64,000 nucleotides of DNA from Camelus ferus (taxonomy: Eukaryota): contig NC_045712.1 of NCBI RefSeq assembly GCF_009834535.1, positions 24,738,001-24,802,000 on the forward strand, read 5' to 3'. The translations under genes and the position numbers were made by a program. Numbering within the stretch: position 1 is the stretch's first letter; the number at the start of each line of letters is the position of its first letter. The notes below the pieces were generated by a model. It made no database searches and had not been told where the DNA came from. It saw only the letters and a program-made list of their open reading frames with translations. Shown here piece after piece: positions 121 through 29,108 of the stretch.

Positions 121-250
121 GCTGTGTGATCCTGGGCTGGTCCCTTCTCCTCTCTGTGCCTCAGCTTCTTAGTTTGTAAAACAGGGATTATAGCACCAAC
201 CTCACAGAGTAGTGGAGATTGAATCAGCAATACACTGGAACACTTAGAAT
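121..250 (+). mobile_element. MIR SINE
   Basis: gctgtgtgatcctgggc...ctctctgtgcctcagcttc...tgtaaaacagggat MIR core. Confidence 0.7.
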
Positions 251-823: not shown

Positions 824-1189
<366 letters not shown>

Positions 1190-3744: not shown

Positions 3745-3920
3745 GATGCTTGATTATTGAGGTATACTTCACATACAGTGAAGTGAGTATACTTTACATT
3801 CATACAGGCCTCAAATCCAGTTCAGTGAATTTTGATGACTGCACACACCCTACGACCCACAGCCCTGGACAGAAAATGCTGCCAGCTCCCCAGAAAGCTC
3901 CCATCATTGCTCTTTTTACC
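3745..3920 (-). mobile_element. L1M (L1MB/MC-like) 3' fragment
   Basis: ttattgaggtatacttcacatacagtgaagtg...cagttcagtgaattttgatgactgcacacacc...ccccagaaagctccc. Confidence 0.7.
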
Positions 3921-3989
3921 TCCCTCCTGTGCAGCACTTTCTCACCACCTACACTTAGCGCATTCCTTTGACGACTCCTTAAACAAATA

Positions 3990-4135
3990 CATACTATAGA
4001 TATTGTACTTCCAATGTGACTGGCTCTGTTCTGAGCACTTTACAAATATTACAAGGAAGAGACTATTACCACCACTCTTTAGCAGAGAAATTGAGGCACA
4101 GAGAGGGAAAGTAATGGCCCCAGATCACACAGCTG
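3990..4135 (-). mobile_element. MIR SINE
   Basis: gagcactttacaaatatt...gaaattgaggcacagagagggaaagtaatggccccagatcacacagct. Confidence 0.65.
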
Positions 4136-4179
4136 TTTCCCAGTAAGGCTGGCACCATGCTGCCTACTGCATCAGACTG

Positions 4180-4280
4180 TGGGCCCACAAGGGCAGGGCC
4201 AGTCTGCCTGGTCACCACTGGGTCCCAGTATTGGCCAGAACACTGACTCAGATAATATTTGTAGATTTAATGAACAAATT
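4180..4280 (+). mobile_element. L2 3' end
   Basis: cccacaagggcagggccagtctgcctggtcaccactgggtcccag...aatatttgtagatttaatgaa. Confidence 0.6.
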
Positions 4281-5844: not shown

Positions 5845-6050
5845 TGTGTGCATGGGTGCAGAGGTGTGCACATGAGCAGGGGTGTGTGTAGGTGTATGTA
5901 GGTGCGTATGTGTGCCCATGGAAACATGGGTGCGTGCATACAGAAGCACCTGCATGTAAGGAGTGTGTGCAAGGGTGTGTATGGGTGTAGGTAGTTTGGG
6001 GACAAGGAATGTGTGTCAGTGTGTGGGCCGTGGGTATGTTTGTGTCTCTA
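5845..6050. repeat. Degenerate TG-rich low-complexity tract
   Basis: Interrupted gtgt/gtat/gcat units. Confidence 0.8.
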
Positions 6051-8129: not shown

Positions 8130-8340
8130 CCCCATGTCCCTGGGGCTAGACCAGGCTCTGCCACTTGGCAGTTATTACGATGGTGGCGGATGTTCACAGG
8201 GCCCCTGCTAGGTACTGGGCAATTATACCCCTTCAACAATGGCATCACTGACCATCATTTTCAGCTGAGAAGACTGAGACTCAGGGAAGTTGTATAGTTT
8301 TTCTGGGTTACAGGGTTCACCCATGGCTATCTCCGAGTCT
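8130..8340 (-). mobile_element. MIR SINE
   Basis: catcattttcagctgagaagactgagactcagggaagtt; a second MIR piece lies at about 7980-8075. Confidence 0.6.
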
Positions 8341-11300
8341 AGGAGTCCTTTGGGAACCAGGATTCAACTCTCATGCCCAGAAAGTTCTGCCCATTTTACA
8401 GATCTCCTCCCGATGCCTGCAAACATTTCCTGCCCTGCCGAGGGGTGGGTAAGCCTGAAGCTGCGGCTGGGAATGCTACCACAGGCACTCTGTCCTCAAG
8501 CATGTGCGGGTCTACGGATGAGTTACTGCCCATCAGGATGCTTGATGAGGATGTAAGCCCTAGGGAACTGGTCCTGGCTCCTTCTCTTTCATTCTCCTTT
8601 CTTTCCAGAGCCACAACCTGGCAAAGCAGGCAAGATGGGGAAGGCCAGCCCCTCTCAAGGGAGCCCAGGAACAAAGAGGGCCCCCAAACAGCTGCTCACA
8701 TTCCAGGCCAAGGCTGGGTACCTGATGGTCAGAAGTGGGGGTGCAAGTAGCTGACTGACTGGGAGCCTCCCTCCTCACCTCCCACCATAGTCCTGGGACG
8801 GGAGGGAGTAGCTGGGGCTCCAAGCTCAATGTCTTCCCAGGAAGCTCTGCGAACAGGAGAGCCAACACACACTTGAAATTGTCAAGTCTCAAGAACACAA
8901 AACTCCTTCAATTTGCTAAATATTGGTGGTCTCAGTTTGTTTGCTTCCCACCAGCCCCAGAAAACCTGGAAACAAAGGCAGAAGTGCCAGGTCTGGGGAG
9001 GAATAGAGAGGTGTGGGGGAGGGGATGAAGGTTTCCAAAAAAAACTAAGCTAGGCTCCTAGGCAGGGAGGGAGAGGGACAGAGGAACATGAGTGCTAGCT
9101 GGGCAGGCCCAAGGGTCCCAGTGCCCTAGGCCAGGGTCCATGAGCTAAGAAGAACCAGTTATGGCCACACAGGGCTCCAGGTCAGACAGACCTGCGTGCC
9201 AGATGCAGAGGACAGTTCCGTCCTCCACTCACCTGTGGCTATGCACAGGCCATTCAATCTCTCTGAGTCTTACTGGACCAACCTGGAAAATGGGGACAGT
9301 GACAGTACTCATATCCCTCAATGGCCGTGAGGATGGAATGAGAACACACAGAGAGCTCAGGTTAGCACAGGACCAAGTGCACACAGAGCAGAGATGGGCT
9401 TCAAGGTTTGCTTGGCTTCAGGGTTCTCCTGTGTCTTGCCTTGAGGTGGCCTCACAGTCTTCACCTCCATGTTCTTCAGATTATGGGGATATTCAGGTGC
9501 AGCCTCTGGGGCCCAGGGAGGTGGGCTCCCTCCAATCCAGCAGGTCACAGAAAATGATCTCAGATCCCGAGAGAGGCAGGACTGGGCTTTGCAAAAGTGG
9601 ACCAAGGATCAAGAGTCTGTGGATCATGTTTTGCTGTGAAAGGCTCAGTGAGGAGGGGGCAGACCCTCCAGCGTGGGGAGATCGTGGCTGATCTCAGGGG
9701 GGAACCCTGGCCATGGGAAACAACCTAAGCCAGGGACCCAAGTCAAGGAATTAACCCAGCCCTCAGCTTTGGCAGACTGGAGGAGGGGGCACCCCCACTT
9801 TCTTCGACAGACACCTTTACATCTGCAACTCCTCTGAGCACCCTCTCGAGCAACGCCCCCTTCTGCAAAGTGTGTGGTAACCTTGCGTTGGTCCCCTAAC
9901 CTCCCTGAGCCCCAGCTCCTCATCTGTGAAATGGGCACACACTCTCCTCACCCATGAGTGGGGCAGGCAGGTCTGGGACTATCAGCACCTGCTTTACAGG
10001 TAGGGAAAGAGGAGCAGAAAGAGCTATGGCCTCCACCCTCTCTCAGAGGTTACACAGTGTGTAAGTAGCAGGACCAGAACTCCCCTGCCCCCGGCAGGTG
10101 CCAGACCCTCACATTCCACCCATGGCCTTCCCACGGGGCTGAGGAGAGGCCGCACGGCATCTCGTGAGCCCTGCGAGTGCTTGCTCAGAGGGTCCAGCTC
10201 CTATTATTCTCCTTTAGCTTCTTAAAGGAGAAAATGATTTTTCTGTCAAAATCAGCTACACAATTGGTGAAACATTACCCTGGTTCTATTTCTTCTATGA
10301 CAGCGTGAAAACAAGACATATTCTTCGCAAGACTGAAAAACTTTTAGCAAACACAAGTGTTTTATTCTGAACTCAGAAATGCCTCTTCAGTGGGCCTTCC
10401 TCATGCAGAGACCCCCACCTCGGCCACTGAGGCTGTGCCCCAGCTGTACTGCAGTCATGCCAGCCCAGCCCATGCAGGGCGACAGAGGCAGTGGCCACCT
10501 TCCCTAAGCAGGGGCAACCAGGGCGAGTGAGGCCATGCCCAGGAGACCCCTGCTGAGGCACCCAGCTGGCCATGCCTCTGGCCAGCTCTGCAGAGGGGGA
10601 CCCAACAGCCTCTAGCTCTCGGAAGGACAGCTGGTTTCTTTCTCCCAGAGGAGATGTTACAAAGATGACAGAGAGTAAGAAGTGGGGGCTGCAGAGACCC
10701 TAGAGAAACGTCTGACTCTGCCCCCAAGACCTGCTCCTCCCAAAGCCAACACCACGTCTGCTCGGCAGCTCTCCCACTCCCCTGGGCTTCATCCACGTCC
10801 CTGCAGCTCCCCACACAGGCCTGGGTGAGCGCGGGCAGCCATCGCCCTCCTCAGGCTCCTCCCAGGGGAGGCAGGGGAACTGGCTGCCCAGGCTTCCAGC
10901 CTCCTTGGCCTTGGGCCCAGGCCCCTCTCTCTGCTGCTCCTGTTCAGCTAGGAGGCTCCCAAGCCTCCAACACCCAACCAGCTCCTGGGAAACTCCTGGT
11001 CTCTGGAGCCACAGCCATGAGGAAGGGGAAGCGAAAGAGGGAGGAAGGCCTCACCCTCTGGGAGGCTGGGACGGTGGCCTGGCAGCACCGAGGGACACTC
11101 CTGCCCTGGGAATGGGCTGCAGTGACTCATCTGTACTCTCTCAGCCTTCCTAGGGTAAAGACGCACCTTGGTACTGGCTTGGCCTGACTCAGAGATCGAA
11201 CTGAGCCACGGAGTGCGCTGGAGAGGGGTCTTAACCCCAGAGCTCCTGTTCCCAGCAGAACACACACCCCACGGTGGTGTCACCCCAGCTGACTGTTCCC

Positions 11301-11479
11301 CTGGCACTGTTCATAGTCACTGCCCACCAAAATGGTCTTCACAGCCAGAAGGGGGGCCCCGGTCAAGCAGAGCACCCAGCCCCTTATTACAGATGGGCAC
11401 ACTGGCCCGGGAGGGGGCCTGGCACACAGGGAAGGATGGCTGAGAGCACAGCTTGGCTGCCAGACAGGCTGGGGTTCCA

Positions 11480-11630
11480 GCCCAGCCTGGGCGTGTCCTG
11501 CTATGTGATCCTGAGTGAGTTAGTTTGCCTTCCTGGACCTCAGTCTCTGCATCCAGGACATGGGGGTGGTGACAACCCATTCTTAGACTCTGCTGTGTTT
11601 GTGTTCAGTGTGTAGAAAGCACTCCAGGGA
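11480..11630 (+). mobile_element. MIR SINE
   Basis: gctatgtgatcctgagtgagttagtttgccttcctggacctcagtctctgcatc. Confidence 0.6.
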
Positions 11631-14589
11631 TAAGTGGGTGCTTTTATCCCCCCGCCCCATGCTGCTGCCTGTCAGAGGGCATAAAGACCACCTGCCAGTC
11701 CCACTGCCACATCCTGAGAAGGGGGTCTGTTTATGTTGCGGGAACAGCTATGGAACAAGCTGAGTCCCCTGGAGGCTGAACCCTTAGGAATGGGGTGATG
11801 ACTGTGGCAGGTCAAGGCCCTGGCCTTTCATGCTCCTGAAAATAGACTCTGATCATCACTTAGGGGGTGGGGTGGGGTCAAGTTCAGGGTGCAGGCTAGA
11901 GAGCCAGCAGCTCTGGGGTGCTCATCCCAGCTAGCGCGGGGCAGCGCAGTTCTGAACCTAAAACAGAGGCACACTCCGCCTCGCACCTCAAGCCCTCCCA
12001 TCCCCTCCATAGGCTCTCTCAGTTGGCTGGGAGGCTGTGGCCCTTTCTCTCCCCGACCTCATCCAGCAATCCTTGGGCGTCACAGTGCTCCTGGTCTTGC
12101 ACCATTGTCCCCAGCAAGTCTCAGACCACTGAGCCATAAAAGGAGACCCACTAGCAGAAGCCACAGCCAAGGCTGACTTCCCAGACTCCACAGGGAACCG
12201 CCTCAGGTTACAAGCTTGGCCCAAATGCCCCTGACTCCAATGCTCCAGCTGCCAAGGCGGACAGCACTCGGTCAAGGCCAGGAGCGGAGGAAACACTGTG
12301 AGCGGCCTCCTTCTTGTCCTATCCCCACCAGACACTGGGGGGTGGGGCAGGCTTTCAGGGTGACTAGGATGAGTAAGATGAGTCCCGAGCACCTGACCAG
12401 CCCCCATCTGTCCTCCGCCTGCTCTCAGCCCGCAGGCTGTGGAGAAGAGGCAAGCCAGGCCCGAACCCATGAGACAGATAGAAGGTGGCAGCCCGAGAGG
12501 GGAGGGACTGAGCGACAGCAGAAGAAACAGAGATGGGCAAGAAGGAGAGGGACAGGGAGGCAGAGAAGACAGAAAGAGGGAAAGCAGCACAAAGAGAAAG
12601 TAGCAAGGACAAAGCCCTCGTCTAAAGAAAAAGGCAAACCTAATACCAAACCTGCAAAAAAAGCAAAATCAATCTTCTCAGCATCCCTGATCCATCCAGT
12701 GCTAAAAAGGCCTCCTGAGGCTCCTCATCCTCAAAAAGGCCCACCTGGTGCTCCTGCTGTAAACCGGCCCCCATGGTTCCCACACAGCAGGGTGCTCATC
12801 ACAATGACACAGGGCCTAATCCACTTAGTTCCAAAAGGGCAGAGGTGGGGAGGCGTTTCTTTCACATCATTCTTTCCAACCCTGCAAGGGGCTGGCTTCC
12901 CCAGGTGCAGGGTAAGCCCAAGTGAGGCCTCATGAAGGCCAATAAAGTGCCACCAAAAACTGTACCCAGGCCGCCCCAGATGAGATCTCCGCTCTCTGAC
13001 AGCGTCTGTGGGCCTGGGCAGTCTCATAGCAGGAGCCCAGGGAGAGTTAGCTACCCAGACCGCATCCCGTTCCCCACCACACATTCAAATCCAGGGTTCA
13101 ACTGCACCAAAATGATGGTGGTTTTGCAAAAAATTCCAAAACTGCCTTTTTCCAAGGTCACTTGGGGAGAAAGTAGCAGGAAGGACTTTAAGCACAGAGC
13201 CCTGTTCCTCTCTCAACCCCAGGTGGCCTCTCATGTGGAGCCACACGAGACCTCGAACAGGTGGGACAAAGGGCAGCAGAACCGAAGTTCTCCTGGGAAA
13301 ACATGGGAGCCTGTGGGAGTCCATTGGAGCCATGATCCCCCTGCCCTGAGAGCAGCAGACTCACCTATCCGGGTGGGACCTGGTGAACACTTTTACAATA
13401 CAGGTGTGCTGCGAAGACGCCCTCACCTAGGGATGACCACTGTCCCCAGCTCTTGCCTGGTGGCCATCACCTTGGGACACATGGCAGCCCGTTGCCAGGA
13501 AAGGAGGCTGGGGGGGCTACAGAGCCAGATGCTCCACCTGCTGCCCCCTCACAGGGGTCTCCTATGATGATGTGTCAAGGAGGTCCTGGGAGAGGAAGAC
13601 AAGGGATCAAAGTAGGAAACAGCTTCCCCAAGTGCAAACCTCAGCAGAGACATAACAGACCTCTGTTGTCATAGAGACCAGGCCCTGAACTGAACAACAG
13701 CCCAGGTGACCCAGAAGCCCCTACAAAACCCCTGGCAACAGTGGTCCACAAGGGTGGTCCTGGTGATGCTAGAAAAATAAGCTCTGGGAGAAGGAGGGAA
13801 GATTTTTGCCCACCTAGTGGGGAAGGTCACCAAAGAGAGAGGCCTCTAGTGGACGACCTATGAATCTGAGTTGTGGGCAGATGGAGAGTGAGAGTCACCT
13901 CTGGCCTTTTCTCTCCATCCTTCAAGCCCTATGTAAACGCCTCTTCTTCCGGGAGCACTTTGGTCCCTCCACAGCTCCCCAGAGTTTGTCAGGGCCCGGA
14001 CCCCAGCCCTGCTGAGATGAGCCATATCTGACCAGGACACAAGACTCGGGAGTGGGGAAGTGGTACTGCACAGCAGGTGCTGAGCTGTCCAAGCCAGACA
14101 TGTCGTCACACCCTGGGTCTTCCTCTGTCATCCACATCCTTCTCAGACCAGAGGCCTGCATTAAAGCTGGCAATGTCTTCCAGAAACCGCCCCTGGCTGG
14201 CCCGGTCCTGACAGTTTTCTCTCCCCCACTCACCAACCTGACTTCCTGCCTGTGGCACCCTGGACTCTGCTAGGCTGCGCTTGCCTGAAATTCAGAAGGC
14301 CTGGGACGAACCACACAACCTTTCTGGTGCAGTCCCACGGCCATCATGGTCCTCGTGCACTGGCCTTGCATGACCACCACCACTTACAGGCACAGAGTCC
14401 TGTACAGTGAGGGAGCTAGGCAGGTACAGACAAATACCAGCAGCATCACTTAGGACCCAGGGGAACCATGGAGGACGTTGCCAGCATCCTTCCAGGGGCC
14501 AAGTCTCAGAGACCCTCCCATGTCCCCACAGACTTGCACGAGGCATGAGATGACTAAGGTGCTAAGACTCTGTCATCAAACTGCCAAGG

Positions 14590-14725
14590 CTCATGTCCCA
14601 GCCCTGCCACTCACCAGCTGTCCACCTTGGGCAAAGCATTCACCTTTATGAGTATCAGTGTCTTCAACCATAAAATGGGAATAACAAGTTAGGTAAGATA
14701 ACACGTATTGCACACTGAGAACAGG
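14590..14725 (+). mobile_element. MIR SINE
   Basis: cccagccctgccactcaccagctgtccaccttgggcaaag...agtatcagtgtcttcaaccataaaatgggaataac. Confidence 0.65.
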
Positions 14726-17700
14726 GTCAGCCAGACAGAACACTCTGGAAAACTGTTAGCTATTTACAAGAATATTAGAATCCACAACCCCAAGGCCTGA
14801 CACCTGGACAGATGGCAGTCACTTCCTGGGTGGGAAGGGAAAAAGGTTCTGGGAGTCCCAGCAGAGGGAATCCCAACAGTAGCCAGGAGCACAGCTTCTA
14901 AAGCTGTGACCAAGGCCGGCTAGGCAGGGTGTGAAGCATCTCAAAACAACCCACCTCCGCGGAAAACCCACAATTGGCATTTCGTAGGGTTTGATGCCCT
15001 CCTTAGGATGCTCATTTAAAAAGCAAATGGCCTACTCCTGGCAGTTCCAAAGGCTCCACTTGAGTGTGGTAGTGCTTGACCTCCTCAGAGCCTTTCCTTC
15101 CAGGAGATGGGCAGCCTGTGGAGATGTTCAGGTGCAGTGAAACCACTACTGCAGACTCCAGACCCCACTGTACAGGGCTGCCAGCCCTCCACATGCTTCC
15201 TGATTTGTTGACTCAGTAAACAAGAGGCCCCGCAGATGCTGATCTGACCGGTCTGGAGATGGCAGGTGAAGGAGTGGCAGCTGCCAGATGAGAAAGTACC
15301 TGGCTGTCCTGGCAGCCCCACCCAGCCTCAAATCCAGCTCTACAGCACCAGCTCCAACAGGCCAGCCCCACCTGTGGAGCAATGCAGGGATTTCCTGGGC
15401 ATGGGGATCTGGCACCCCACCACTCCACTCCACAAAGACAGTAAGAGGAGGGCGCTGGGAGCCCTGGGGGCCTCCAACAGGCTCCAGTGGACCCAGAGCC
15501 CAGAGAGCAGGGGCAGAAAGAAGACTCCATTTCTCCTCCCATGTGCAGAACCCCTCTTTTATTGTTTTTATTTAAGTCACTTCTGCCTGCCAAGAGGCTG
15601 AGGACCACAAGTGGGCTTGGCAGGAAGTCAGGAGGGAAGAGGATTCTGGCCTCTGCTATAATCCGCCCTCCCAGTTAAGCCATGTGACTTCTGACCACTA
15701 ACTCCAGGTTCCAATTTTCATATATGGGATAAGGATTGAGGGGCTGGATCTCAGCTATGATGGGGTGACTGATGGGGGACAGATGGGCAGAGCTGTGTCC
15801 AGTTAGGAGTGAAGCTAAGGGGTGTCAATTAACCAGTTAGGACTGGAAGGGGTCACAAGCAAGAGGTCAGTAGGAGGCAGTCCCCTGCCCTGGATACTTG
15901 GCAAGCAGACCTCCAGTTCCTGCCAAAGGGACAGCAACAAGTGCTAAGGGTGGAATGGAGAGTGGACTGACAGCACTGGTGGCGGAAACTGGCCTTGGGA
16001 GGGAGCCGCTGAGTGTGAATGAGGCCAAGATAGACCAAGCCAGTGATCAGGGGCTGAGGGAAAGGGGAAGAGGCCCAGCTCCCCAAGGAGGAGGAGTCTA
16101 CTTCTCTAGGGCCCCCAAAGAGCAGCAACAGCTACAGGGACAGCGACCACAGCTCTTCCTGCTTTATGAGCGCCTGCCCTGTTTCAGGCTTCATACTAAG
16201 CACTATCTGCCACCTTGAGCAACAGGACCAGGAGAATGGGCATAGAGAGCGATCAAGACGCTAGACCTGGACCACCAGGAAGGAGTGGGCTGGACAAATC
16301 CAGGCTACAGGACAAGGACAGGCCAGCCTGGGGACCTGGGATGGTCTGGGGAAGCTGAGAGACACAGAGCCCAGGGCCTCTACTTAGGCTGACCTGGAGC
16401 AACTGGAGAAGGGGCTAGGTAGAGGCAGAGAGAGGGCTGAGACCCATTCACAGGCTGGCTGAGCTCCTGGGGCCCAGGCCTGCCCATGTGCTGAGGTCCC
16501 CCTGTCCTGGGCCTCCTGGGTAGGGAGCAGAGGCTATAAGCAGAAAGGTGCCCCCTCCCTCCTCAAAGCAGAGTCATCACTCACAGTATAGGTACAAAGT
16601 GCTTCAGGCTGTGTTTGTCCCATCTTGAAAGATGGAGTGAACCTGCCCAGTAGGGTACGGACTTTTAGGCTTGGTCACTGGAGAGGGTGGGGGTTGGCAA
16701 GAACAGGAAGGTGCTGGGGTGGGGTCCACATCTAATCCATGTCCCCCTGGAGGGCCAACCTAGGGTCAGGTCCTGAAGGTCTCAAGCCAGTAGCCCTAGT
16801 CACACTCACCCCTGAAGCCTTAAGGGGTTCTGTAAGCCTGTCCCAGTTCCCAGCCCAGAACAGAGAGCACTGAGGCCCTAGATTCAAGAGAAGATGCCTT
16901 GGAAGTTGTTGCAGTCACAAGTTCCCCCAAGTTACTTGTTAGACACAGCACCTATGGGGAAGGGCCTAGACCCAGTCCTGGGTCTAGGCCAGCGCTGCCT
17001 GGGCCCATGATCTCTAGCCTCTCACACTCTCCATTCCTCCCTCACAGCATCTGGAGTACCACAGGGGCTGGTCAGAGCTCAGCCCTGGCTCACAGGGCCA
17101 AAGCCTCAGTATTAAGAGGTACTCTGGCCTCAGTCAGCCTCTTGTCTACCCAGACTGCCCCCTGACCCTAGCAGGGCTGAAAGGGCTAAGACAGTGCTGA
17201 GGAAGAGGGTGGAGATTCTCACTTCTCACCCCATTACCCCCATCTCCCCTCAGAAGAGCCACCTTTTCCCTGAAGGACTCAGAGAATCCCCTGCCTGGGG
17301 CTCCAAAAGGGCCCCCTAACCCCACTCCACTGCTGAGTTAGTAAGCCAAGAAGCTGTGCCTGAGACCTAGCCCCACCGGCCCAGCCCTGAGCATCCTCAA
17401 GACCCATTCTCATGATCCCTTCCAAGATCACCCTGGGGAGACGACTATTAGTCCTAGTGCCACTGGGGAAGACAGAGAGTTAGGCCCAGGCCCCTGCTCA
17501 GACACTTGCAAACCCTGCATGCTAAATAAGTCCTGTAGCCTCTCCAGAGCTGCTCCAGTTTCTTTACCAATTACTCTACATGCATCATTTCATCCCAAGC
17601 TCACATCAACTCCTTATCTTATCAACCCTTGCAGAGAGGCAGAAACCTGATTTCAAGAGTCCAAAGAGCTAGTCCAAGGTCATGGAGCTGGCAAATACAG

Positions 17701-18630
17701 GCCAAAGATTAGAGCTACATCTGCAGGACTCTGTGCTCAGGCTTATGATTGCAATGACTATAAAATGAGAAGATCCTTGCTGTAGTCTAACCTCCAGGAG
17801 CCACTCTCCTTGCCATGCTCTACCCACCCAAGTGGCCACTGGCACAAACTGCAATTAAGTAAAGTTCCCAGTGATGACAGATTCAAGGGATTCTGGGTAT
17901 GGGGCAGGGTCCTAGGCCCAGAAGTATGTGGCTAGATCAGCCATCCCCAGGACTGCCTGGATTCCACCTGTATCAGTGAGGTCTTAGCCAGGCCTACAGC
18001 GGCATGACGTGGCTAGATGGCTGGCCTGCCCTCTGCCCAGGAAACAGGGTGGGTCAGACTTGAAATAGGGCCTGCCCCTTTCAACATGGGTCTGGTGACT
18101 CAGCTAGAGCCCATCAGCACCTTCCTGCCCACAGGTGTGATGGGCATCAGCCTTGCCCACCAGCCAGCCCTAAGAGGCTCCCACCACTGCAGCCGGGCAG
18201 GCAGGGGCCACAGGAAAATGTAGCCCCACCTCAAGCTTTCATGGGGACTCAGTCACAGGCAGAAAGAAACTCAAACCCATTTCAGTCAGAAGAGCTTTTC
18301 ATGGAAGGAACAGCCAAGCTGAGTGAAGGTCCTCCTTGGGCCCAAACACATAAGCCCAGCCAGAAACCCAGAATCAGGAGCCACTCTTTCCCTACTTCCG
18401 GGTACAGCAGGCTCTACTCATACTGACTCCACCCCCTGCTCCCTGGGACACCATGAGCTTAGCTAGGCTAAGCCTCAGTTTCCCCATCTCTAAAGGAAGA
18501 AGGACCTGACTTTACAAGGAAGTTTGAGGATGAAAAGTGCTGCTGAGAGTAAGATTAACAGGGGCCCTGGGCATTTCCTGTACCCACAGGCCTCTGCTGT
18601 TGGGCCCTCCAAGTCACCTACGCAGCACTA

Positions 18631-19560
<930 letters not shown>

Positions 19561-19671
19561 TGTGAGCCCCGAATTTTACCAACCACTAGGGAAGTGAAAG
19601 CACAGATGTCTTGTTTCTGTTGGAGATTCAGGTAGCCTCTTGAGTCGGTTGTTTTCTCTGCACGTTGCTAG

Positions 19672-19840
19672 GAGCAGTGAGGGGAAACCATGCATTCTGA
19701 CTCACCTGGGTTAATTGGTCAGTTGCAAAACATGTATCCATGATGTACCCATGTGGGGAATGTGTGTAAGCATTGGTACCGGTATGGACACCGCAAGGGG
19801 ACAGACATCACCATTGCGTACTTTTTACCTTTCTGTATGT
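19672..19840. repeat. Left arm of a 169-bp inverted duplication
   Basis: Reverse complement of 21626-21794 with only 2 mismatches (19736/21730 and 19818/21648). Confidence 0.98.
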
Positions 19841-19859
19841 AACTTGTAAGTCTTCTGAC

Positions 19860-20190
19860 TTCCTTAATAGTGACCGATCGCCAGAGTACCTAAAGTCTTA
19901 ATTTTTGCCAACATGCCAAGTGAAATGCAATTTTGTGATTCTCGTCTCTCTGGTTCCTGGTGGCTCTGGGCGTCTCTCTAGCACTGGCATCTCTCCCTTT
20001 CTGTGCATCTCTTGCTCATATTCTGTTGGGAATACAGCGTCCTTGGACCAAAATTCTAAATTCCCATTTGGTCAGATCCATCAACTTTTCACCTTATGGT
20101 TTGAGCTTTTGGTGTGTTTAAAAAGCCCCCTCCTTCCACTCCAGTGGCAGATATTCTTTATTAGCTAAATGGTTTTCCCTTCCACATTTA
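19860..20190 (-). mobile_element. Degraded L1M fragment
   Basis: aatttttgccaacatg... and atcaacttttcaccttatggtttgagcttttggtgtgtttaaaaag resemble antisense L1M. Confidence 0.5.
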
Positions 20191-21084
20191 GGCCTCTACT
20201 CTGAGCCCATCTTAGATTACCTTACATAAATAAACCGGTTTTCCCATCCCAGGCTGTTAACTCTCATTTCACAGATGAGAAAACTGAGGACCCCTGAGAG
20301 GAAACAACTTGTCTAGAGCCGCAGGGTGTGTGGCTGTCTCCTTGGACAAATCTACACTACTCCCGTATATCCTTCTCACACCCCGCCCCCAATCCCAAAC
20401 GAGGTGTCGTGCTTGGGACTGGGAAGGTGCGAGGTGGGGCAGGATCCCTGCACGGTCCTCTGCTGCCATCTACCGACCATTAACGGGACTGCAGGAACGC
20501 GACCTCTGTCCCAACCATGGGTTATCTATGTATATGCTTAAGTATTCAAAGGTATCTTCTGGCTCTGGGATTGGGGCCCCGCAAGCTCCCTGTCCTATGC
20601 ACCCCCAACACACATACACACACATGTGGATGCACACTGATGCCTTATCCAAGCTCTTCAGTGCAGCAACTCCAGGAGAAAGGGCACCCTCTCTGTACAG
20701 TGATTGAGCTGGATGAGGGTGTGTTGAGGGTCTGCTCTGTTTCCTTAAGGAGACCTTCAAGCTAGCAGGGTTCAGAAAAGCAGAGGCCCTGAAGATAGTC
20801 TCAACTAAGAGTACTGAACCATCCTTTTGGACCAGACACTGGGGAAGTGCTCTATCTGGCACCCCATGACCTCACTGGGACTGGAGACGGGAGGGCAGTA
20901 CCAATCCCACACAGCCTGCAACACAGACACATAAGACAGACAAGTCTTGAGAGGTCAAGAAACCTGCCTGAAGTCAGTAGCTGTCATGGCAGAGCCCCCA
21001 TCCCAACCCCCAAAGAACAACTCCAGGGCCCAGCTCTCACCCTCAAATTATGCCCTCCTCTCCTGTGCCCCTCTGCCCCCTCCC

Positions 21085-21200
21085 ACATCCATATGTACAT
21101 ATTCTCACACGTGTTCACATATGCACAATCACACATTTACATGTGTGCACACATGCACATAGAGATACACAGGCATGCACACAACACACACACATTCATG
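21085..21200. repeat. Degenerate CA/CATA-rich low-complexity tract
   Basis: Interrupted cacat/acat units. Confidence 0.8.
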
Positions 21201-21564
21201 CCTAGCTGGACCAGGACTTCTCTCCTTGAGCCTCACCTGAGAATCTGATCCAAGATCCCAGAGCCTTGAATAAAGCCTGTGATCCAGATATTTTCATTGC
21301 TTGGAGACTAGAAAAGGATCCTCCTTCTTCTGTGGGGGTGGCTGGTTTGAGCCAGATGAACCCAAAGCTGAGCAATGTTTCATTCTGGACAAGCAGGTCT
21401 CGACTCATAAGCAGCAGGCTAGGGAGTTGAGGGTGGAGGCAGGCTCCTTGTCACAGACAAGGACTTCTCTGCATGCCATGGTCTCTGAGATATCTTATTT
21501 TCTAAAAATAGAGTTAGATTACAATTGTTCTAAAATTTTTATATTTGTAGTTTTCAAACTGGTC

Positions 21565-21850
21565 TCTTTTTATTAAAAATTTTAATTGCATAAGTAAAAC
21601 TTGATTGTTATATAATAAATAAAAAACATACAGAAAGGTAAAAAGTATGCAATGGTGATGTCTGTCCCCTTGCGGTGTCCATACCGGTACCAATGCTTAC
21701 ACACATTCCCCACATGGGTACATCATGGACACATGTTTTGCAACTGACCAATTAACCCAGGTGAGTCAGAATGCATGGTTTCCCCTCACTGCTCATGTTC
21801 CAGTAAGTATCTGCCACCTGCCCACTGATGGGAGGATTTAGTATTTGGGA
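21565..21850 (-). mobile_element. Degraded L1ME-like 3' end containing the right duplication arm
   Basis: T-rich start followed by aaacatacagaaagg, atgggtacatc...tgttttgcaact and cccactgatgg, which resemble the antisense L1ME 3' UTR. Confidence 0.45.
21626..21794. repeat. Right arm of a 169-bp inverted duplication
   Basis: Read base by base against 19672-19840: 167/169 identical. Confidence 0.98.
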
Positions 21851-24383
21851 TGGCTGGGCCAGGGCAGGGGTGGGTTCATGGTGGCAGATTCTGCCACACA
21901 GCCCTTCATGATAGCTGCACATCTATGGGGATGGGGGCTGAGGCCTTTGGAGTAGCTTACAATGACCAAGGGGTCCAGTAAGTGCCTGAACAGCATGGGA
22001 GGGGGGCAGCTGAACCCTCCCTCCCCCAACACACACACACTGTTCTTTGAGAAGAGAGGCTGCACATGTGAGAGTATAGAGACAAATGAGCCAGACCTTG
22101 AGGAAGGAACTCCCGTATAGTCTCGTGACCCATCTTCTGACTGTTCTGAGTGGGGAGGGGCAGAGAGATCCTGCAGCAAGGCCAGTTCCTGGGGTGCAAG
22201 GCAGGGGTTTTTCTGCAAGGGAGAATCTAAGGCGATTTGACACAAGAAACTAGGAGAGGAATTGCCACTGGGTGTCAGTGTTGGCCCAGCAATCAGGGCA
22301 AGAGGTGATAATTAGATGGCTCCAGGGACTCACAACACCTAGGGCAAGCAGGCACCTGGGGCAAAACAGAGGCATATCACTGTCCCCAGCATGCCTGAAA
22401 GGTGCATTACACTGTCAAATTCACAAAGGACGGTTGGAGGGCAAAACCCTTGGGGCCCTTTAGTTTACACACAGAACTGCATAATCACCGACTTCTGTAG
22501 GGGGCTTTCAAGGGGACATCCTTGGTGCTCGGCCATTGACTGGCCAGGAGACAGGGAGGCTTCACTGAGGACCTGAAAGTTGGATCCCGAAGGATGCCTA
22601 GAAGCTGGCATGTCGCAAGAAGAGGAAGTGTGGGGAGGGATGGGGCCTGAGAGATCTAGGATATACTGTAACCTCTCTCTGCCTCAGTTTCATCACCTAT
22701 TAAGAGGGGGCAATATGTAGTAGTAAGAAAATAAAATGGGGCTGGAAATTGCTGAGCACACCTGGCACATAGTAAGTGTTCAGTAAAGTAGAGTGAGAAG
22801 GAAGCGGTACAGTATTAGGGTAGAGAGCTTGGGATTTGTCCCCACAGAGAACTAGGTTCAAATCCCAGCTCTGTTGCTTGGCAACTGCGAAGGCCCTTTG
22901 CCTTCACAGTAATGCAGGGCAGTAGCCAGTTCCTACTGAAGAGATAGCATCTGACGCAGGAGCCCCAGGCTGGGATCTCCAGGTGCCCCAGCCGTCAAAG
23001 TGAGTAACAAGGGTTCCACGCCCATCAGCATCCCATTAAAGGAGCTTCTAGCCTATTTTGGTGGGGCTACACTGAAGCTCAACTTCTCTTTAGGAAATTT
23101 ATGGAGAAGTGGATTCCCTGAAGTCACTTCTCATTTGAACCAATTATTTTGTCATTTTGTCCTGTTTCACAGGGCTTTGCTTTTGGATCTCTCTGTTTTT
23201 CATCTCCTCCCAGGCAGGGCAAGCTCAGCCCTGTCTGCCCTGGGGAAAGTCTGGACACTACCATCCAGGCCTCTGGACACTGCCAGCAGTCTGTCATCCC
23301 TGGCAGGAGATCTGAATCTTACCTTCTTCCCTGGGAACATGAGGATACACATTGGACAGTGGGGAGTGGGGAGCAGACCCTGTCGTTTCCCCAATTCTCT
23401 CCCTCTCTTTCTGGCCTAAGGGCTTGGAGAAGGTGTACGTAGTCCCTATAGTCTTTCAAGATGCTTCCTGGGGAGTCCAGTGAACTCAGAAAAGGTGGAG
23501 AGGATTGCAGGTAGGAGCATGGGCTTCTGACTTTTGTTCCTGGGGCTCAGTCTTGTCTGCATAGTGGGGGCAATACCAGCTGTTGAAGATAAAGTGTAGC
23601 AAGTGCTCCATGTAGATGGGAGGGGGTGTCACTGCTCCTTCTCTCTACCTTATCATCCTACAGTTTCTCTCTGGGTGTTTGGAGCTCCAGGTCTCCCACA
23701 TTTTTAGGAGGCCCACCAATCCAGAGACAGATGTAGACTGTCCAGTGGGCTGAGCTGGGGGCTCACTATCCTTGCCTGCCTCCCCAAGTCAGTAGTCATT
23801 TCTTCCCTGACTGGAGGGCCTGCCAGAGGCCAGCTTAGGGTCGAGACTGAATGGCCCTGCTTGGTGCAAATGTTGCTATGGTGACTTTTCCCCCAGGTCT
23901 CAGAGAAAACGTTCTTGCCTGGATCCTTTTGGCTGTGGTGATGTCAGGATTGACCCCCGTGGACCTGCTCGGTTCTGAGTACTCCTTCCACATCTTTTCC
24001 ATCCCCCAATGTCCCTCTTCAAACCATATCCCATGCGACCCACACACAGAGTCCAGGTGCAGCCCACAGGGGGCGCCCGCACACCAAACCGCCTTGAAGA
24101 AGACGAGCCCGTGACCCCGCCCTCCTGCTGTCACCACTTCTTCAGAGATAAGAGGTCCTGTCCCCAAGGAAGGGGAATGCCCGAAGAAAATCTGGACTTG
24201 GGTCTGTAGAACACCGGCCCCTCCCTGGCCTTCTGCTCGGTCATTCCCTAGTGGTCTCTAGGTCAGGCTCAACCCCACATAGTCACGTCAGCCTCGGGTC
24301 CAAGCGCTATAATTGGTCCTCCTCAACCACTCTGCTCCTCCTCCTGCACTTCGATTGGTCGGTGAGCGGGGTCCCGCCCCATT

Positions 24384-24403: not shown

Positions 24404-24500
24404 ATCTGTCAAAGGTGTTTCCTTTAGCGGCCCTCGGCCCAAGACTAGGGAGCCGACGCCTCTGCCCGCACCTCTCCCCGCCGGGCCGCACAGCCGGCGG

Positions 24501-24526
24501 TTCTAGGAAGACATCGCTTCCGGGAA
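24501..24526. promoter_or_regulatory. CISH promoter proximal STAT5 (GAS) pair
   Basis: TTCTAGGAA (24501-24509) and TTCCGGGAA (24518-24526), 8-bp spacer. Confidence 0.93.
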
Positions 24527-24745
24527 GGGCTGGAACTCAGAGGACAAAAGATTAGGCTGCTCGCCCCGCCCCGCCCTCCCGGCCTGCCCCCCGCTCCCTT
24601 CAGGCCCGCCCGCACCGCCACCTCTCAGTCCCTGCCCGCCGCCTGTGCGCCCCGGGACCCAGACCTGCGAGCGCGACCCGCTCTCTCCAGCCACCGCCGT
24701 CTGGCCGAGCCCCAGCTCCGGAGCTGCCGCTGCCGCTGCCGGGAC

Positions 24746-24765
24746 ATGGTCCTCTGCGTTCAGGG
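24746..24765 (+). CDS. CISH: CISH coding exon 1 (MVLCVQG)
   Basis: gacATGGTCCTCTGCGTTCAGGG|gtaag: the CISH N-terminus followed by a phase-2 donor. Confidence 0.96.
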
Positions 24766-27681
24766 GTAAGCGCTGTTCTTCGCCCCCGCCCAGCCTCCGA
24801 GCTGGCACAAGGCAGGGTACTGGCCTCGTGCTAGGTGCCGAGTATTAAGAAAGCCTGACGGGTCAGAAAGCGCCGGAAAGACCTCGGGAGTGACAATAGG
24901 GAGGGGTGACAACATCGTCACCACCTCTACTCGCACCGTGGGTAGGGAAACTGAGGGTCGACTGGCGACGGGAGAAACACAGGGTGGGCTAAGCTGGGGT
25001 TCAGGCCGAAGCAGGTAGACGCCTCAGGCAGCGCGGACTTCAAGACCTGGCTCACCTGCCCAGACCCCCTTCTGGGCCCAGAAAGCTCTACCCTGGCCTG
25101 CTGGCCTGGTGGCATACTGATGACCTTGGGTCAGCCCCTGCCCCTCTCTGTCCTGTCATCCACTCTCCTGCTAGCAATTAGGCTCTTCTGGAGAAGCCAG
25201 CCTGAGATCCTTGACTCTCCTCAGGGTGGCACCTGCTAAACAAGCAGCTCTTGGGAGAGCCTAGGTTTAGCCCCGTCCTGTCTGGGGCACCCCCACAATA
25301 GCTTCACCCCTCCTCTCAGCCCAGTCTGGGATCCCAGTGTGAGAAGGAACTTGGCTCCTGCCCTGCTTTCTCCAAGTTTCCCAAAGACTTGCGGGGGTGG
25401 GCACTGATAAGACAGTCTTGGCCTCAGCTAAGCATTCTTAGCACGTTCTTTCTGCCCAGAGCCTCAGGGTCCCCTTCAACCAAGGGGTCTGATGCTCTCC
25501 AGACTGATCTGACAGGAGCTCAGAAAGCTCCAGGGAGAGAGAAAGATGTGAGTGGGTGCTCCACAGACAGGGAGAGCTCGGTGGCCCAGTGGCTGCTGTT
25601 ATCAAAACTGGCATGGTACCAAATGAGGAAGGGTGGAAGGTGGAGTGAGGCTCAAGTACCCCTTGTTCTGAGCAGTCCTGTTTCCAGGGAGGAGTCCTGG
25701 AGGTGCTAGGAAGACTAGGTGCTAGGAAGAAATAATTCAGTATTTCTCCTTAATTGTCTCCAGTATCTCCCTTCCTCCTCTCTGAATTTTGGGATTCTAG
25801 AACACCTTCCCACACCACCACTGCCTTTGTTTTCAGGAACCCCCCAATTCTGGGGTCCCACACTCTCTTTCACTTTGCTCCAGCTGAAGATGCCCTTGGA
25901 ACCTCAGATGCTGGGTGTCAGGGAGTGAGATTTTTAAGACCTACACATACACACACAGCCACAGACCAGCTGGTGCCCTCCTGAGGAAGGGAGCAGGGAT
26001 TCTCCACTATAGGTCTGGGTTGTTGGCTTTGCTGAGGGATCCCCCCTCAGGGCTGTTTGCCCTAATTGGCTTGGTCCCCAGGCAGAACTCACAGGCTGAG
26101 CTCCATAGTAGGCACACACACGTACAAGCCACCCACACCTGGAACACACCAGCCACCGCCCCCACCATGACGATGACACAGCTGTGGACACACCCCTCCC
26201 AGATATACACTCACTCACCAGGAGCTTGTGGTGACCAATACAGCCATTCACACACCCAGACACCATGTTGGCCCTAGAGGTACCCACATTCACATGTGCC
26301 CTGCTAAACTCCGGGGGCTCCATCTGGCCTGACCAGCTAGCAGCCTACCCTACTTCGGGAAGTCTCCTGGGCCTGAGATGAGCCCTGGATCCCAGCAGGC
26401 AGGCCACCAGTCAGTTCCTCGGAACTCAGCCTCCAGCTCCCCAAAAGGGATTCCAGGGCTCTGTAGTGCAGTGGGAGTCGGGGTGGAGAAGTATTAGCAG
26501 GCTGTGGTGTGCCAGGGTCTTGGGGCCCCTTCTCCTCAAAGTGATCATGGGGCCCTGATTTGTTAAAATTTTCTAAGAGTCACCTATAACCTACACTGCC
26601 AGATCTGGTTCCTGTGTCTGGCTCCTGCTGTCGGCTCCTGCCCACCTCTTCCTGCCTCGTAAGCAATACCTGGCAGTGTTTACCCATGCTGTCATTTCTG
26701 CCTGCTGTCCCTTCCCCGCTACTCCTTCCTTTGGCCTAGCAAACTCAGCTCAGGAGCAGGCAGACCCTGACTTCCCCATGACATTCTTTGCTTTTATGAC
26801 TTTGGATTGTTAGTTCTCCTTTAGGGCAGGGCCCAGGGTTTCATTACCTTGGTGTCCTGAGATCCAGCAAGGGACCAGACCCAGAACTTAGGCCTGAGGA
26901 TTTTGTGATGAGGAGGAGAGGACAAGCAGTCTTCCTTGGGAACCAGGACCATGCCCCTCACTCCCAGGAAGCCCCAGGATCACCATGCTGGGTGGGTTTC
27001 CCCTAAAGGGAAGCTACTGCTCCAGTTGCAGCCAGTTCAACAACCCAACTCTAGCCATCTGAGAATATAATGCGGCCAAACCCCTCAGTGTCTGGGCTGC
27101 TAGGAACCCTCATGGAGAGGGGTGGGGCACGGGTAGAGAAGCTGAGGTCTAGGGAAGAGCAAGGTTTGTATAAGATCTAGTGCCTGGTAGGGCAGGCTTG
27201 TCAGGGTGGGATCCGGAAGGTGGAATGAGTACCCTGCCCTTCAGTGGGAGCTTGTGTTTATGGGAGGTGGGACTTGCCAGCACCTTTAGAGGCCACTGTC
27301 TACCCCAGACCCTCAGCTGGAGGAACAGAGAAAAGGATGGGAGTCTGATCTGTTTGGGGAGACTATTCTGGCCTCTAAGCCCTGGATAGTGTGGACCTAG
27401 GTCCCTCCAACAGATACTCTTATCATTGGAGAGGTCACATGTGACCTCAGACATCCTACCATAATCTTGGGGCCTCTTGGAGGACCCCGCACAGGCTCAT
27501 CCCTTGGCTCAACCAGGACTAGTGCCATTTAATCAGCCCACCACTGCCAGGAGAGCACCATTGTAAGGCCTCTTTGCATTGAATCCTATCAGTGTGGTGG
27601 AGACACCAACTGGCCACTGTGAGCTAAAAAGGCATATAGGGAATGATCTGTGTATTTGGTTGGTCCAAAATACAGAGATTA

Positions 27682-28128: not shown

Positions 28129-28349
28129 ACCTTGTCCTTTGCTGGCTGTGGAGCAGATCGGGCAGCGGCCTCTGTGGGCCCAGTCCCTGGAGCTGCCCGA
28201 ACCAGCTATGCAGCCTTTGCCTGCTGGCACCTTCCTGGAGGAGGCAGCCGACGAGACCCCAGCCAAGTCAGAGAGTGAGCCCAAGGTTCTGGACCCTGAG
28301 GAGGATCTGCTGTGCATAGCCAAGACCTTTTCCTACCTTCGAGAATCTG
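28129..28349 (+). CDS. CISH: CISH coding exon 2 (221 bp)
   Basis: Acceptor cttcttctag|. Encodes [25 protein letters not shown]...[20 protein letters not shown]. Donor G|gtgagt. Confidence 0.97.
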
Positions 28350-28584
28350 GTGAGTCTGAGGAGGAAGACAGGCCTTGTCCTGGAAAGTCTGATGGGAGAA
28401 GTTTAGTTCTGCCTTTTGAGTCTAATTTGAGAGACATGGCCCTGCCCAGAAGAGTCTGATGGGGGAGGTACAGCCCTCCCTAGGGACATATGAAGGGAGA
28501 AGCTGAGCCTTGCCCTGCCCTGGGTTGGTGCCCCCAGCTAATTTCCACTGTGACCATTTTCTTGCCCCCTCTACACTTGCCTAG

Positions 28585-29108
28585 GCTGGTATTGGGGTTC
28601 CATTACGGCCAGCGAGGCCCGGCAACACCTGCAGAGGATGCCAGAGGGCACATTCCTAGTACGCGACAGCACCCACCCCAGCTACCTGTTCACACTGTCT
28701 GTCAAAACCACCCGCGGCCCCACCAACGTGCGCATCGAGTATGCAGACTCCAGCTTCCGCCTGGACTCCAACTGCCTGTCCAGGCCGCGCATCCTGGCCT
28801 TCCCAGATGTGGTCAGCCTTGTCCAGCACTATGTGGCCTCCTGTGCTGCAGATACCCGAAGCGACAGTCCTGACCCTGCACCTACCCCGGCTCTGTCTAC
28901 ACCTAAGGAAGATGTGCCTGGTGACCCAGCACTGCCTGCTACTGCTGTGCACCTAAAACTGGTGCAGCCCTTTGTGCGCAGAAGCAGTGCTCGAAGCCTG
29001 CAGCACCTGTGCCGCCTCGTCATCAACCGTCTGGTGGCTGACGTGGACTGCCTCCCACTGCCCCGGCGCATGGCTGACTACCTCCGACAGTACCCCTTCC
29101 AGCTCTGA
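28585..29108 (+). CDS. CISH: CISH coding exon 3: SH2 domain, PEST insert, SOCS box
   Basis: Acceptor cttgcctag|. Encodes [28 protein letters not shown]...[40 protein letters not shown]. Total CDS is 20+221+524 = 765 nt = 254 aa. Confidence 0.98.

What the first reader, a model, noticed from the sequence alone, without database searches (positions are those of the whole stretch)
19672..21794. Young 169-bp inverted duplication between the MAPKAPK3 and CISH promoters
Seen in sequence: 19672-19840 is the reverse complement of 21626-21794 at 167/169 identity. Both differences are transitions, one at a CpG. The spacer is 1785 bp. Every other repeat in the window is heavily decayed, so this event is very recent. 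Each arm carries an AP-1 site (TGACTCA at 19698-19704; TGAGTCA at 21762-21768) and TAATTG, so the left arm places an AP-1 site about 380 bp upstream of MAPKAPK3 exon 1. ATGT occurs at the end of the left arm (19837-19840) and directly after the right arm (21795-21798). Inference: the right arm looks embedded in an old L1ME-like relic on both sides, which favours it as the donor of a templated inverted insertion. An inversion with staggered breaks is the alternative. The arms could support recurrent inversion of the spacer, or a 169-bp dsRNA stem if the region is transcribed through.
Basis: partly seen in the sequence, partly recalled or inferred. Interest (0 to 1): 0.7.

Follow-up and report, generated by a model that had tools for sequence, protein, structure and literature searches.

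The report
Young inverted templated insertion upstream of MAPKAPK3
A 169-base stretch that has always lain upstream of the CISH gene was copied backwards into a spot 1.8 kb away, next to the MAPKAPK3 promoter, in this (probably camel) lineage only; this is a clean natural example of a known DNA copying error, and it appears to have created a long RNA hairpin.

Summary
19672-19840 is the reverse complement of 21626-21794 at 167/169, with sharp ends, and it is the only significant self-repeat in the window.

It is not an assembly artefact. In three independent DNA-like runs the arm sits at 1.35-1.9 times the depth of its flank. An independent RNA run carries all four junctions. Six more runs hold every sampled word across both left-arm junctions.

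Orthologous loci of pig, cattle, an odontocete and brown bear settle the polarity:
- The right arm, both its flanks and the spacer are ancestral and colinear.
- The left arm is absent in all four. They carry 12 bp (GCCCTCCAGTAT-like) that the window lacks.

So the left arm is a lineage-specific inverted copy of the right arm that replaced 12 bp. The junctions share only 1-3 bp and show no target-site duplication and no poly-A. This is the signature of a template-switch (MMBIR/FoSTeS-type) insertion, unusually long and long-range for its kind. Estimated age is about 3-6 My, with wide error.

The inversion and repeat-family alternatives are rejected. The AP-1 motif is at chance level and not conserved.

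New here: a canonically spliced minus-strand (MAPKAPK3-sense) RNA crosses the region, and three RNA-only T>C differences suggest A-to-I editing of the hairpin. That part is unproven.

The parts
19672..19840 (-). Left arm: the derived, lineage-specific inverted copy (the insertion)
   Evidence: Absent at the orthologous site in pig, bear, odontocete and cattle. 167/169 identical to the reverse complement of the right arm. It carries one derived change at 19736, where the outgroups and the right arm share the other state.
21626..21794 (+). Right arm: the ancestral template (donor)
   Evidence: Aligns colinearly, together with both its flanks, to pig, bear, cattle and odontocete at 70-79% identity.
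19841..21625 (.). Spacer: ancestral intergenic sequence, not inverted
   Evidence: Colinear BLAST blocks with all four outgroups, for example window 19845-21554 against L009 4635-6337 at 82%.
19670..19674 (.). Left junction: target ...GCTAG joined to the copy GAGCAG...; 2-3 bp (AG or GAG) shared by target and template
   Evidence: Outgroups read CAGAAG|GCCC, CCCTGAG|ACCT, CAGACG|GCCC and CAAAAG|GCCC at this point.
19838..19843 (.). Right junction: copy ...GTATGT joined to target AACTTGTAAG; 1 bp (T) shared. The ancestral 12 bp GCCCTCCAGTAT between the two junctions was lost.
   Evidence: Outgroups read ...GCCCTCCAGTAT|AATCTGTAAG. No target-site duplication and no poly-A.
20023..21236 (-). Intron of a minus-strand (MAPKAPK3-sense) RNA, lying inside the spacer
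   Evidence: An RNA-run contig joins 20025 to 21240 with a 3-nt ambiguity. Only the minus strand gives canonical sites: CAG|GTGAGG and CCCAACAG|AATATG.
21237..21337 (-). 3' part of an upstream exon with a conserved splice donor
   Evidence: Contig 8 of run X15. The donor block is nearly invariant in odontocete, pig and bear.
19475..20022 (-). RNA-covered stretch downstream of the acceptor that contains the whole left arm
   Evidence: X15 contigs 19475-19701, 19672-19840 and 19811-20025. Fourteen RNA or probable-RNA runs hold 0.33-0.91 of its words.
19746..19761 (-). Two candidate A-to-I sites, 19746 and 19761 (T>C on +, A>G on -)
   Evidence: Seen in the RNA-run arm contig linked to the left-arm marker A at 19736. 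Absent from the reference and from the X14 left-arm path. There is no DNA from the same animal.
21648..21648 (-). Right-arm site that forms the only A.C mismatch of the minus-strand hairpin. It reads C instead of T in the RNA run.
   Evidence: X15 contig 7 links the right-arm inner flank to the G-equivalent state. This is either editing or a CpG polymorphism.
18628..18969 (-). ORF holding the first coding exon of MAPKAPK3. The CpG island at about 19000-19500 lies between it and the left arm.
   Evidence: The translation carries the MAPKAPK3 N-terminus. GC is 0.74 over 19000-19499.
28139..29108 (+). CISH exons 2 and 3 (SH2 and SOCS box). The CISH CpG island lies at about 24500-25000.

Best explanation
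The left arm (19672-19840) is a lineage-specific insertion. DNA synthesis left its template next to the MAPKAPK3 promoter and resumed on the opposite strand 1.8-2.1 kb away, at the ancestral sequence 21794->21626. It copied 169 nt and then returned 12 bp downstream of where it had left. The result is a reverse-complement copy that replaces 12 bp, with 2-3 bp and 1 bp of junction microhomology. In the four-point description of template switches this is the 1-4-3-2 pattern. It fits the MMBIR/FoSTeS-type 'templated insertion with replacement', arising either at a stalled fork or during break-repair synthesis.

Shown:
- Both copies are real.
- The right arm is ancestral and the left arm is derived.
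- The spacer is not inverted.
- The junctions lack a target-site duplication and a poly-A tail.

Inferred:
- The template-switch mechanism itself.
- An age of roughly 3-6 My.

A consequence that is partly shown: a spliced MAPKAPK3-sense RNA runs through the region. An RNA holding both arms would fold into a 169-bp hairpin with one G.U pair and one A.C mismatch, which is a likely ADAR substrate.
For: - The inverted repeat is exact at the stated coordinates.
- Empty site with an extra 12 bp in pig, bear and odontocete and in cattle.
- The right arm and both flanks are colinear with all four outgroups.
- Both arms are equally distant from the outgroup orthologues, 70-79%.
- Arm contig depth is 1.83x, 1.91x and 1.35x that of the single-copy flank in three independent runs. 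X14 (organism B) carries the left-arm-specific A at 19736.
- All four junctions appear in RNA run X15.
- Six further runs hold 100% of the sampled words across both left junctions.
- The published signature of MMBIR templated insertions is an inverted copy of a nearby template flanked by microhomology, including insertions with replacement (PMC8421209).
- 1-4-3-2 events that create a single inverted repeat are a majority pattern among great-ape template switches (PMC7954356).
- Splice sites are canonical on the minus strand only, and the donor is conserved.
- The modelled spliced RNA pairs 168 of 169 arm positions, with a duplex energy of -341 kcal/mol.
Against: - The microhomologies are very short (1-3 bp). 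They cannot be fixed exactly because the nearest outgroup I could reach is only about 82% identical.
- The copied length (169 nt) and the template distance (1.8-2.1 kb) exceed what the short-range surveys report: median 12 nt, maximum 128 nt, templates within tens to hundreds of nt.
- No closer relative was reachable, so the date rests on 2 substitutions. Gene conversion between the arms could make the event look younger than it is.
- The DNA-run contigs over the left flank and the spacer were withheld by a filter. For DNA runs, the left junctions therefore rest on word shares and depth, not on laid contigs.
- A third identical copy elsewhere in the genome is made unlikely only by the roughly 2x depth.
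Confidence: 0.78

Rival explanations
1. RNA- or cDNA-templated patch repair of a double-strand break (class 2 templated sequence insertion). A fragment of the local transcript that covers the right arm was reverse-transcribed and ligated into a break beside the MAPKAPK3 promoter.
For: - The junctions show the class 2 features: no target-site duplication, no poly-A, a micro-deletion of 12 bp and minimal microhomology (PMC5110952).
- The donor region is transcribed (RNA contigs over 21566-22714).
Against: - Class 2 insertions are described as templated from distant genomic regions. Here the template is only 1.8 kb away on the same molecule, which proximity-driven DNA template switching predicts and an RNA patch does not.
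- Nothing in the copy, such as a splice junction, marks an RNA origin.
Confidence: 0.1
2. An older inverted duplication, for example from the camelid stem lineage, that is kept 99% identical by gene conversion between the arms. The mechanism of origin is the same but the event is not young.
For: - Another inverted repeat in this genome was reported by an earlier agent as ancient and homogenised (s1-148981; unchecked by me).
- The RNA run shows the two arms identical at the 19818/21648 site in one animal. Conversion would explain that, though so would polymorphism or editing.
Against: - At 169 bp the arms are short for efficient conversion.
- The insertion is absent from every outgroup.
- There is no direct evidence for conversion.
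Confidence: 0.08
3. Inversion of the 1.8-kb segment with staggered breaks that duplicated the ends.
For: None beyond the inverted-repeat geometry itself.
Against: The spacer is colinear with pig, bear, cattle and odontocete. Only one arm is novel, and its flanks are the intact ancestral site minus 12 bp.
Confidence: 0.01
4. Two independent insertions of a young high-copy repeat, or the terminal inverted repeats of a transposon.
For: None.
Against: - The right arm is orthologous sequence at neutral divergence in four outgroups.
- Depth is about 2x, not many-fold.
- There is no other copy in the window and no target-site duplication.
- An exact 33-mer from the arm has no hit in the metagenome contig collection, which is weak evidence.
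Confidence: 0.01
5. An assembly fold-back artefact in the reference.
For: Small inverted repeats can arise from chimeric long reads.
Against: - Both left-arm junctions occur in contigs of an independent RNA run.
- Every sampled word across the junctions is held by six further runs from at least three studies.
- The arm shows roughly double depth in three runs.
Confidence: 0.02

Closest known systems
MMBIR-type templated insertions (MMB-TI; Osia et al. 2021, PMC8421209) and FoSTeS/MMBIR template switches
   Same: An inverted copy of a nearby template, with the template retained, microhomology at the junctions, replacement of a few target bases, and fixation as a germline or evolutionary variant.
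   Different: The published detector covers insertions from 10 bp up to read length, with templates within 100 bp. Here 169 bp was copied from 1.8-2.1 kb away, and the microhomologies are only 1-3 bp.
Short-range template switches in great apes, four-point model (Walker et al. 2021, PMC7954356; Loytynoja and Goldman 2017)
   Same: The point order 1-4-3-2, which generates a single new inverted repeat and a net gain in length. It is detected by comparison with an outgroup.
   Different: The median copied length there is 12 nt and the maximum 128 nt, within tens to hundreds of nt. This event is longer and reaches about ten times further.
Class 2 templated sequence insertion polymorphisms (Onozawa and Aplan, PMC5110952)
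   Same: No target-site duplication, no poly-A, and a micro-deletion and microhomology at the junctions.
   Different: Those are thought to be RNA-derived and to come from distant loci. Here the template is adjacent on the same chromosome.
Inverted-repeat SINE/Alu pairs as ADAR substrates in transcripts
   Same: Two inverted copies in one transcribed region that can form a long intramolecular dsRNA. Clustered A>G changes are seen in RNA.
   Different: The arms are not SINEs. They are 99% complementary, which is much more perfect than typical inverted SINE pairs (that comparison rests on my own knowledge). Editing here rests on a single RNA run without matched DNA.

Membership tests
Template-switch (MMBIR/FoSTeS-type) inverted templated insertion | The inserted sequence is the reverse complement of a nearby sequence | tested here: met
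   167/169 match, 1785 bp apart.
Template-switch (MMBIR/FoSTeS-type) inverted templated insertion | The template stays in its ancestral place and the insertion site is empty in outgroups | tested here: met
   The right arm is colinear in four outgroups and the left arm is absent in all four.
Template-switch (MMBIR/FoSTeS-type) inverted templated insertion | Microhomology at both switch points | tested here: inconclusive
   AG or GAG (2-3 bp) on the left and T (1 bp) on the right. The exact ancestral bases are uncertain because the nearest outgroup is about 82% identical.
Template-switch (MMBIR/FoSTeS-type) inverted templated insertion | No target-site duplication, no poly-A, no transposon ends | tested here: met
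   Junction alignment: 12 bp lost and nothing duplicated.
Template-switch (MMBIR/FoSTeS-type) inverted templated insertion | Size and range typical of the surveyed short-range class (128 nt or less; template within about 100s of nt) | tested here: not met
   169 nt copied from 1.8-2.1 kb away, against the published ranges. This is a limit of how the surveys were run, not a mechanistic criterion.
Class 2 TSIP (RNA/cDNA patch at a double-strand break) | The template is an RNA, usually from a distant locus | not testable with these tools
   The donor is transcribed, but it is adjacent and the copy carries no RNA-specific mark.
Inversion with duplicated breakpoints | The enclosed segment is inverted relative to outgroups | tested here: not met
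   The spacer is colinear in pig, bear, cattle and odontocete.
Transposon or dispersed young repeat | Many copies, target-site duplication, and the whole unit absent in outgroups | tested here: not met
   About 2x depth, no duplication, and an ancestral right arm and spacer.
ADAR-edited intramolecular dsRNA | Both arms lie in one transcript | tested here: inconclusive
   RNA contigs cover all four junctions and a minus-strand splice removes 1.2 kb of the spacer. No single molecule links the two arms.
ADAR-edited intramolecular dsRNA | Clustered A>G changes in RNA that are absent from the DNA of the same individual | tested here: inconclusive
   Three T>C (+ strand) differences at 19746, 19761 and 21648 in one RNA run. 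All are A>G on the spliced strand, and one lies at the A.C mismatch. There is no matched DNA, and contigs give no read counts.

The most novel reading that the evidence does not exclude
The insertion created a lineage-specific, 99%-perfect 169-bp hairpin in a spliced upstream MAPKAPK3-sense RNA. The intron 21236->20023 shortens the loop from 1785 nt to 571 nt. This hairpin is edited by ADAR, most strongly at its single A.C mismatch (21648). It acts as a new endogenous dsRNA at an immune-signalling locus (MAPKAPK3/CISH), with possible effects on MAPKAPK3 5'-leader function, dsRNA sensing or siRNA production.
Probability: 0.3. Interest if true: 0.55.

Novelty: new member of a known kind. Interest (0 to 1): 0.36.

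Why it matters
This is an unusually well-resolved natural example of a template-switch insertion. The donor, the target, the 12-bp replacement and both junctions can all be read, and the polarity is proven by four outgroups. At 169 nt copied over about 2 kb, it lies between the short-range events catalogued in apes and the kilobase-to-megabase rearrangements of genomic disorders, a size range the usual detectors do not cover. It also shows how one replication or repair error can create a near-perfect long dsRNA hairpin in a transcribed promoter-proximal region of an immune kinase gene. That gives a simple system for testing how quickly such hairpins acquire ADAR editing. It is not a new kind of element, and no function has been shown.

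Tried and rejected
- **First read-laying run.** Laying reads on 19400-22100 failed because a filter blocks 20256-20293. The call was lost, so only the left stretch 19400-20255 could be laid. The right arm's own stretch and further RNA runs were never laid.
- **DNA contigs over the left flank and spacer.** They were not shown, presumably because of the human-likeness filter. I treated this as no evidence either way.
- **Search for closer relatives to date the event.**
  - The CISH cluster listings show only 15 named members and no camelid.
  - A search with a non-coding ORF next to the right arm found nothing.
  - A search with the MAPKAPK3 first-exon ORF found nothing above 91% identity apart from one 98% match over only 42% of the query.
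  - Exact look-ups of window ORFs near the arms found nothing, or only a 1-kb contig.
  - Two exact-pattern scans of the metagenome contigs found nothing.
- **AP-1 motif as a functional clue.** Rejected as evidence: 16 matches against 14 expected in the window, and the motif is not conserved in the outgroup orthologues.
- **ATGT as junction microhomology.** Rejected. It lies on the donor's outer flank, and the ancestral target has nothing matching it there.
- **L1ME identity of the donor's surroundings.** Not tested, because no repeat library was available.

Full report
**1. The observation**

The window holds an inverted repeat with arms at 19672-19840 and 21626-21794. The arms are 169 nt long, 167/169 complementary, and 1785 nt apart.
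- Identity falls to random immediately outside all four ends.
- The two differences are 19736 A against 21730 C, and 19818 G (in a CpG) against 21648 T. Both are transitions.
- A self-comparison of the whole 64-kb window finds no other repeat at E<=1e-10.
- No third copy of the arm lies in the window.

**2. Setting**

- The ORF at 18628-18969 (-) carries the MAPKAPK3 N-terminus. A CpG island (GC 0.74) follows at about 19000-19500.
- CISH exons 2 and 3 lie at 28139-28349 and 28638-29108 (+), with their CpG island near 24500-25000.
- The repeat therefore lies in the 5-kb head-to-head interval between the two genes, and the left arm abuts the MAPKAPK3 CpG island.
- An earlier agent's note calls the genome a camel. 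My own evidence fits a camelid but does not prove it:
  - Identity in this interval is 80-82% to an odontocete, 75-80% to pig, 73-84% (mostly about 75%) to cattle and 68-77% to bear.
  - CISH shares the 3-residue deletion seen in cetartiodactyls.

**3. Is it real?**

Only Logan contigs could be laid, and only on 19400-20255, because one call was lost to a filter.
- In three independent DNA-like runs (X5 and X6 of organism A, X14 of organism B), the 146-bp arm contig has 1.91x, 1.35x and 1.83x the depth of the single-copy right-flank contig. That right-flank contig enters the arm by 30 nt.
- X14's arm contig carries the left-arm-specific A at 19736.
- In RNA run X15, separate contigs span the left outer junction (19475-19701) and the left inner junction (19811-20025). 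Two more contigs carry the right arm's outer and inner junctions as loose ends. These match the reverse complements of 21795-21824 and 21596-21625 exactly.
- Six further runs from at least three studies hold 100% of the 58 sampled 31-mers of 19475-20022, the stretch that contains both left junctions.

An assembly fold-back is therefore very unlikely.

**4. Which arm is ancestral?**

I used CISH proteins of other mammals to fetch 10 kb upstream of CISH in pig (L001), brown bear (L004), cattle (L006-8) and odontocetes (L009-11).
- In every species the right arm and both its flanks align colinearly, and so does the spacer.
- The left arm is missing at the orthologous place. The window reads ...GCACGTTGCTAG[169-nt copy]AACTTGTAAG.... 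The outgroups read ...GCACGCTGCCAGAAG-GCCCTCCAGTAT-AATCTGTAAG... or close variants (cattle).
- The left arm matches the outgroups only in reverse, at their right-arm orthologue, and with the same 70-79% identity as the right arm itself.

Hence the right arm is the template and the left arm is a derived inverted copy. The spacer was never inverted.

At 19736 the outgroups agree with the right arm, so that change happened in the copy. At 19818/21648 the outgroups are uninformative (A or G). CpG decay in the right arm is the simplest reading.

**5. Junction anatomy and mechanism**

- The copy replaced 12 ancestral bases (GCCCTCCAGTAT).
- Target and template share AG, possibly GAG, at the left junction and a single T at the right junction.
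- There is no target-site duplication, no A-tail and no transposon-like end.
- Copying stopped where the template runs into an A/T-rich tract (21596-21625).

This is the signature described for MMBIR-type templated insertions: an inverted copy of a nearby template, flanked by microhomology, sometimes with replacement (PMC8421209). In the four-point description of template switches it is the common 1-4-3-2 order that creates a single inverted repeat (PMC7954356).

It differs in scale. Those surveys report a median of 12 nt and a maximum of 128 nt, with templates within about 100 nt to a few hundred nt. Here 169 nt were copied from 1.8-2.1 kb away.

The main rival is an RNA/cDNA patch at a break (class 2 TSIP, PMC5110952). 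It shares the junction features, and the donor is transcribed. However, the close proximity of the template argues for DNA template switching.

**6. Age**

- Two differences in 169 bp give about 2.7-5.9 My for rates of 2.2 to 1.0 x 10^-9 per site per year. The Poisson range is 0.3-21 My.
- Organisms A and B both carry the repeat. They are near-identical across the 2.7 kb, each with a word share of 0.97, so this adds little depth.
- I could not reach any closer relative.
- Gene conversion could hide a greater age.

**7. Consequences**

*AP-1 motif.* The motif in each arm is no more than chance would give (16 found against 14 expected in the window). It arose in this lineage from GGAGTCA-like sequence.

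*Transcription through the region.* This is the more interesting result.
- An X15 RNA contig joins 20025 to 21240. With the 3-nt ambiguity, the skipped part is 20023-21236, which reads CT...AC on the + strand. That is a canonical GT-AG intron on the minus strand, with good sites: CAG|GTGAGG and CCCAACAG|AATATG.
- The donor block is almost invariant in odontocete, pig and bear. The acceptor AG is present only in the window and in pig.
- Odontocete annotations include a MAPKAPK3 model that starts beyond CISH.
- Fourteen RNA or probable-RNA runs hold a third to nine tenths of the words of 19475-20022.

So a MAPKAPK3-sense RNA crosses both arms. In a model of the spliced RNA the arms pair at 168 of 169 positions (duplex -341 kcal/mol), with one G.U pair and one A.C mismatch.

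*Candidate editing.*
- The X15 arm contig, linked to the left-arm marker, has T>C at 19746 and 19761.
- The X15 contig carrying the right arm's inner junction has C instead of T at 21648. That is the A of the A.C mismatch on the minus strand.
- All three changes are A>G on the spliced strand, and none has a 5' G.
- This pattern is what ADAR editing would give. However, it comes from the contigs of one RNA run with no DNA from the same animal. SNPs remain possible, and 21648 is a CpG site.

*Inversion.* Short-read contigs cannot reveal inversion of the spacer by recombination between the arms. Nothing suggests that it occurs.

**8. Verdict**

- The inversion, repeat-family and artefact alternatives are rejected.
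- The event is a new, unusually long member of a known class of mutation.
- Its only potentially notable feature is the near-perfect hairpin it placed in a transcribed region, which needs raw stranded RNA reads and matched DNA to evaluate.
- Earlier notes on this genome list other small inverted templated insertions (unchecked). The class may be common there.

Noticed in passing
window 21205-21275 (minus strand): A block around the splice donor CAG|GTGAGG is far better conserved than its surroundings. About 50 of the window's 71 aligned bases are invariant across window, odontocete, pig and bear. This suggests an old upstream non-coding exon of MAPKAPK3, or of a promoter-associated RNA.
   Followed up: partly
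L009 and L011 (odontocete loci), gene model 1-14741 on the minus strand: The odontocete annotations carry a 516-residue MAPKAPK3 model whose range runs across the whole CISH gene. In relatives, therefore, MAPKAPK3-sense transcription is annotated as starting beyond CISH.
   Followed up: no
window 21648: The right arm's T at this CpG-derived site reads as C in RNA run X15, while three DNA-like runs show both states. It is either a segregating CpG polymorphism, conversion between the arms, or RNA editing at the A.C mismatch.
   Followed up: partly
L001 3786-5194 (pig) and L006 5017-8328 (cattle): Pig and cattle each have a large lineage-specific block (about 1.4 kb and about 3.3 kb) in the MAPKAPK3-CISH interval that does not align to the window. 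These are probably their own repeat insertions.
   Followed up: no
window 28638-29108 (CISH exon 3): The window's CISH lacks three residues (PAV) that carnivore and other sequences have, as do pig, ruminant and whale CISH. Its exon 2 is about equally close to carnivore and odontocete sequences (91%) and more distant from ruminants (83-84%).
   Followed up: partly
window 20256-20293: A MIR-like core (…CATTTCACAGATGAGAAAACTGAGG…) lies in the spacer.
   Followed up: no
other pieces of the same genome (earlier notes s1-149324, s1-149850, s1-149104, s1-149250): First-stage readers noted further small inverted templated insertions (124 bp, 50 bp) and young inverted repeats with 1.5-1.7-kb spacers (388 bp, 78 bp) elsewhere in this genome. 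The recurring kilobase-scale spacing may deserve a genome-wide look.
   Followed up: no
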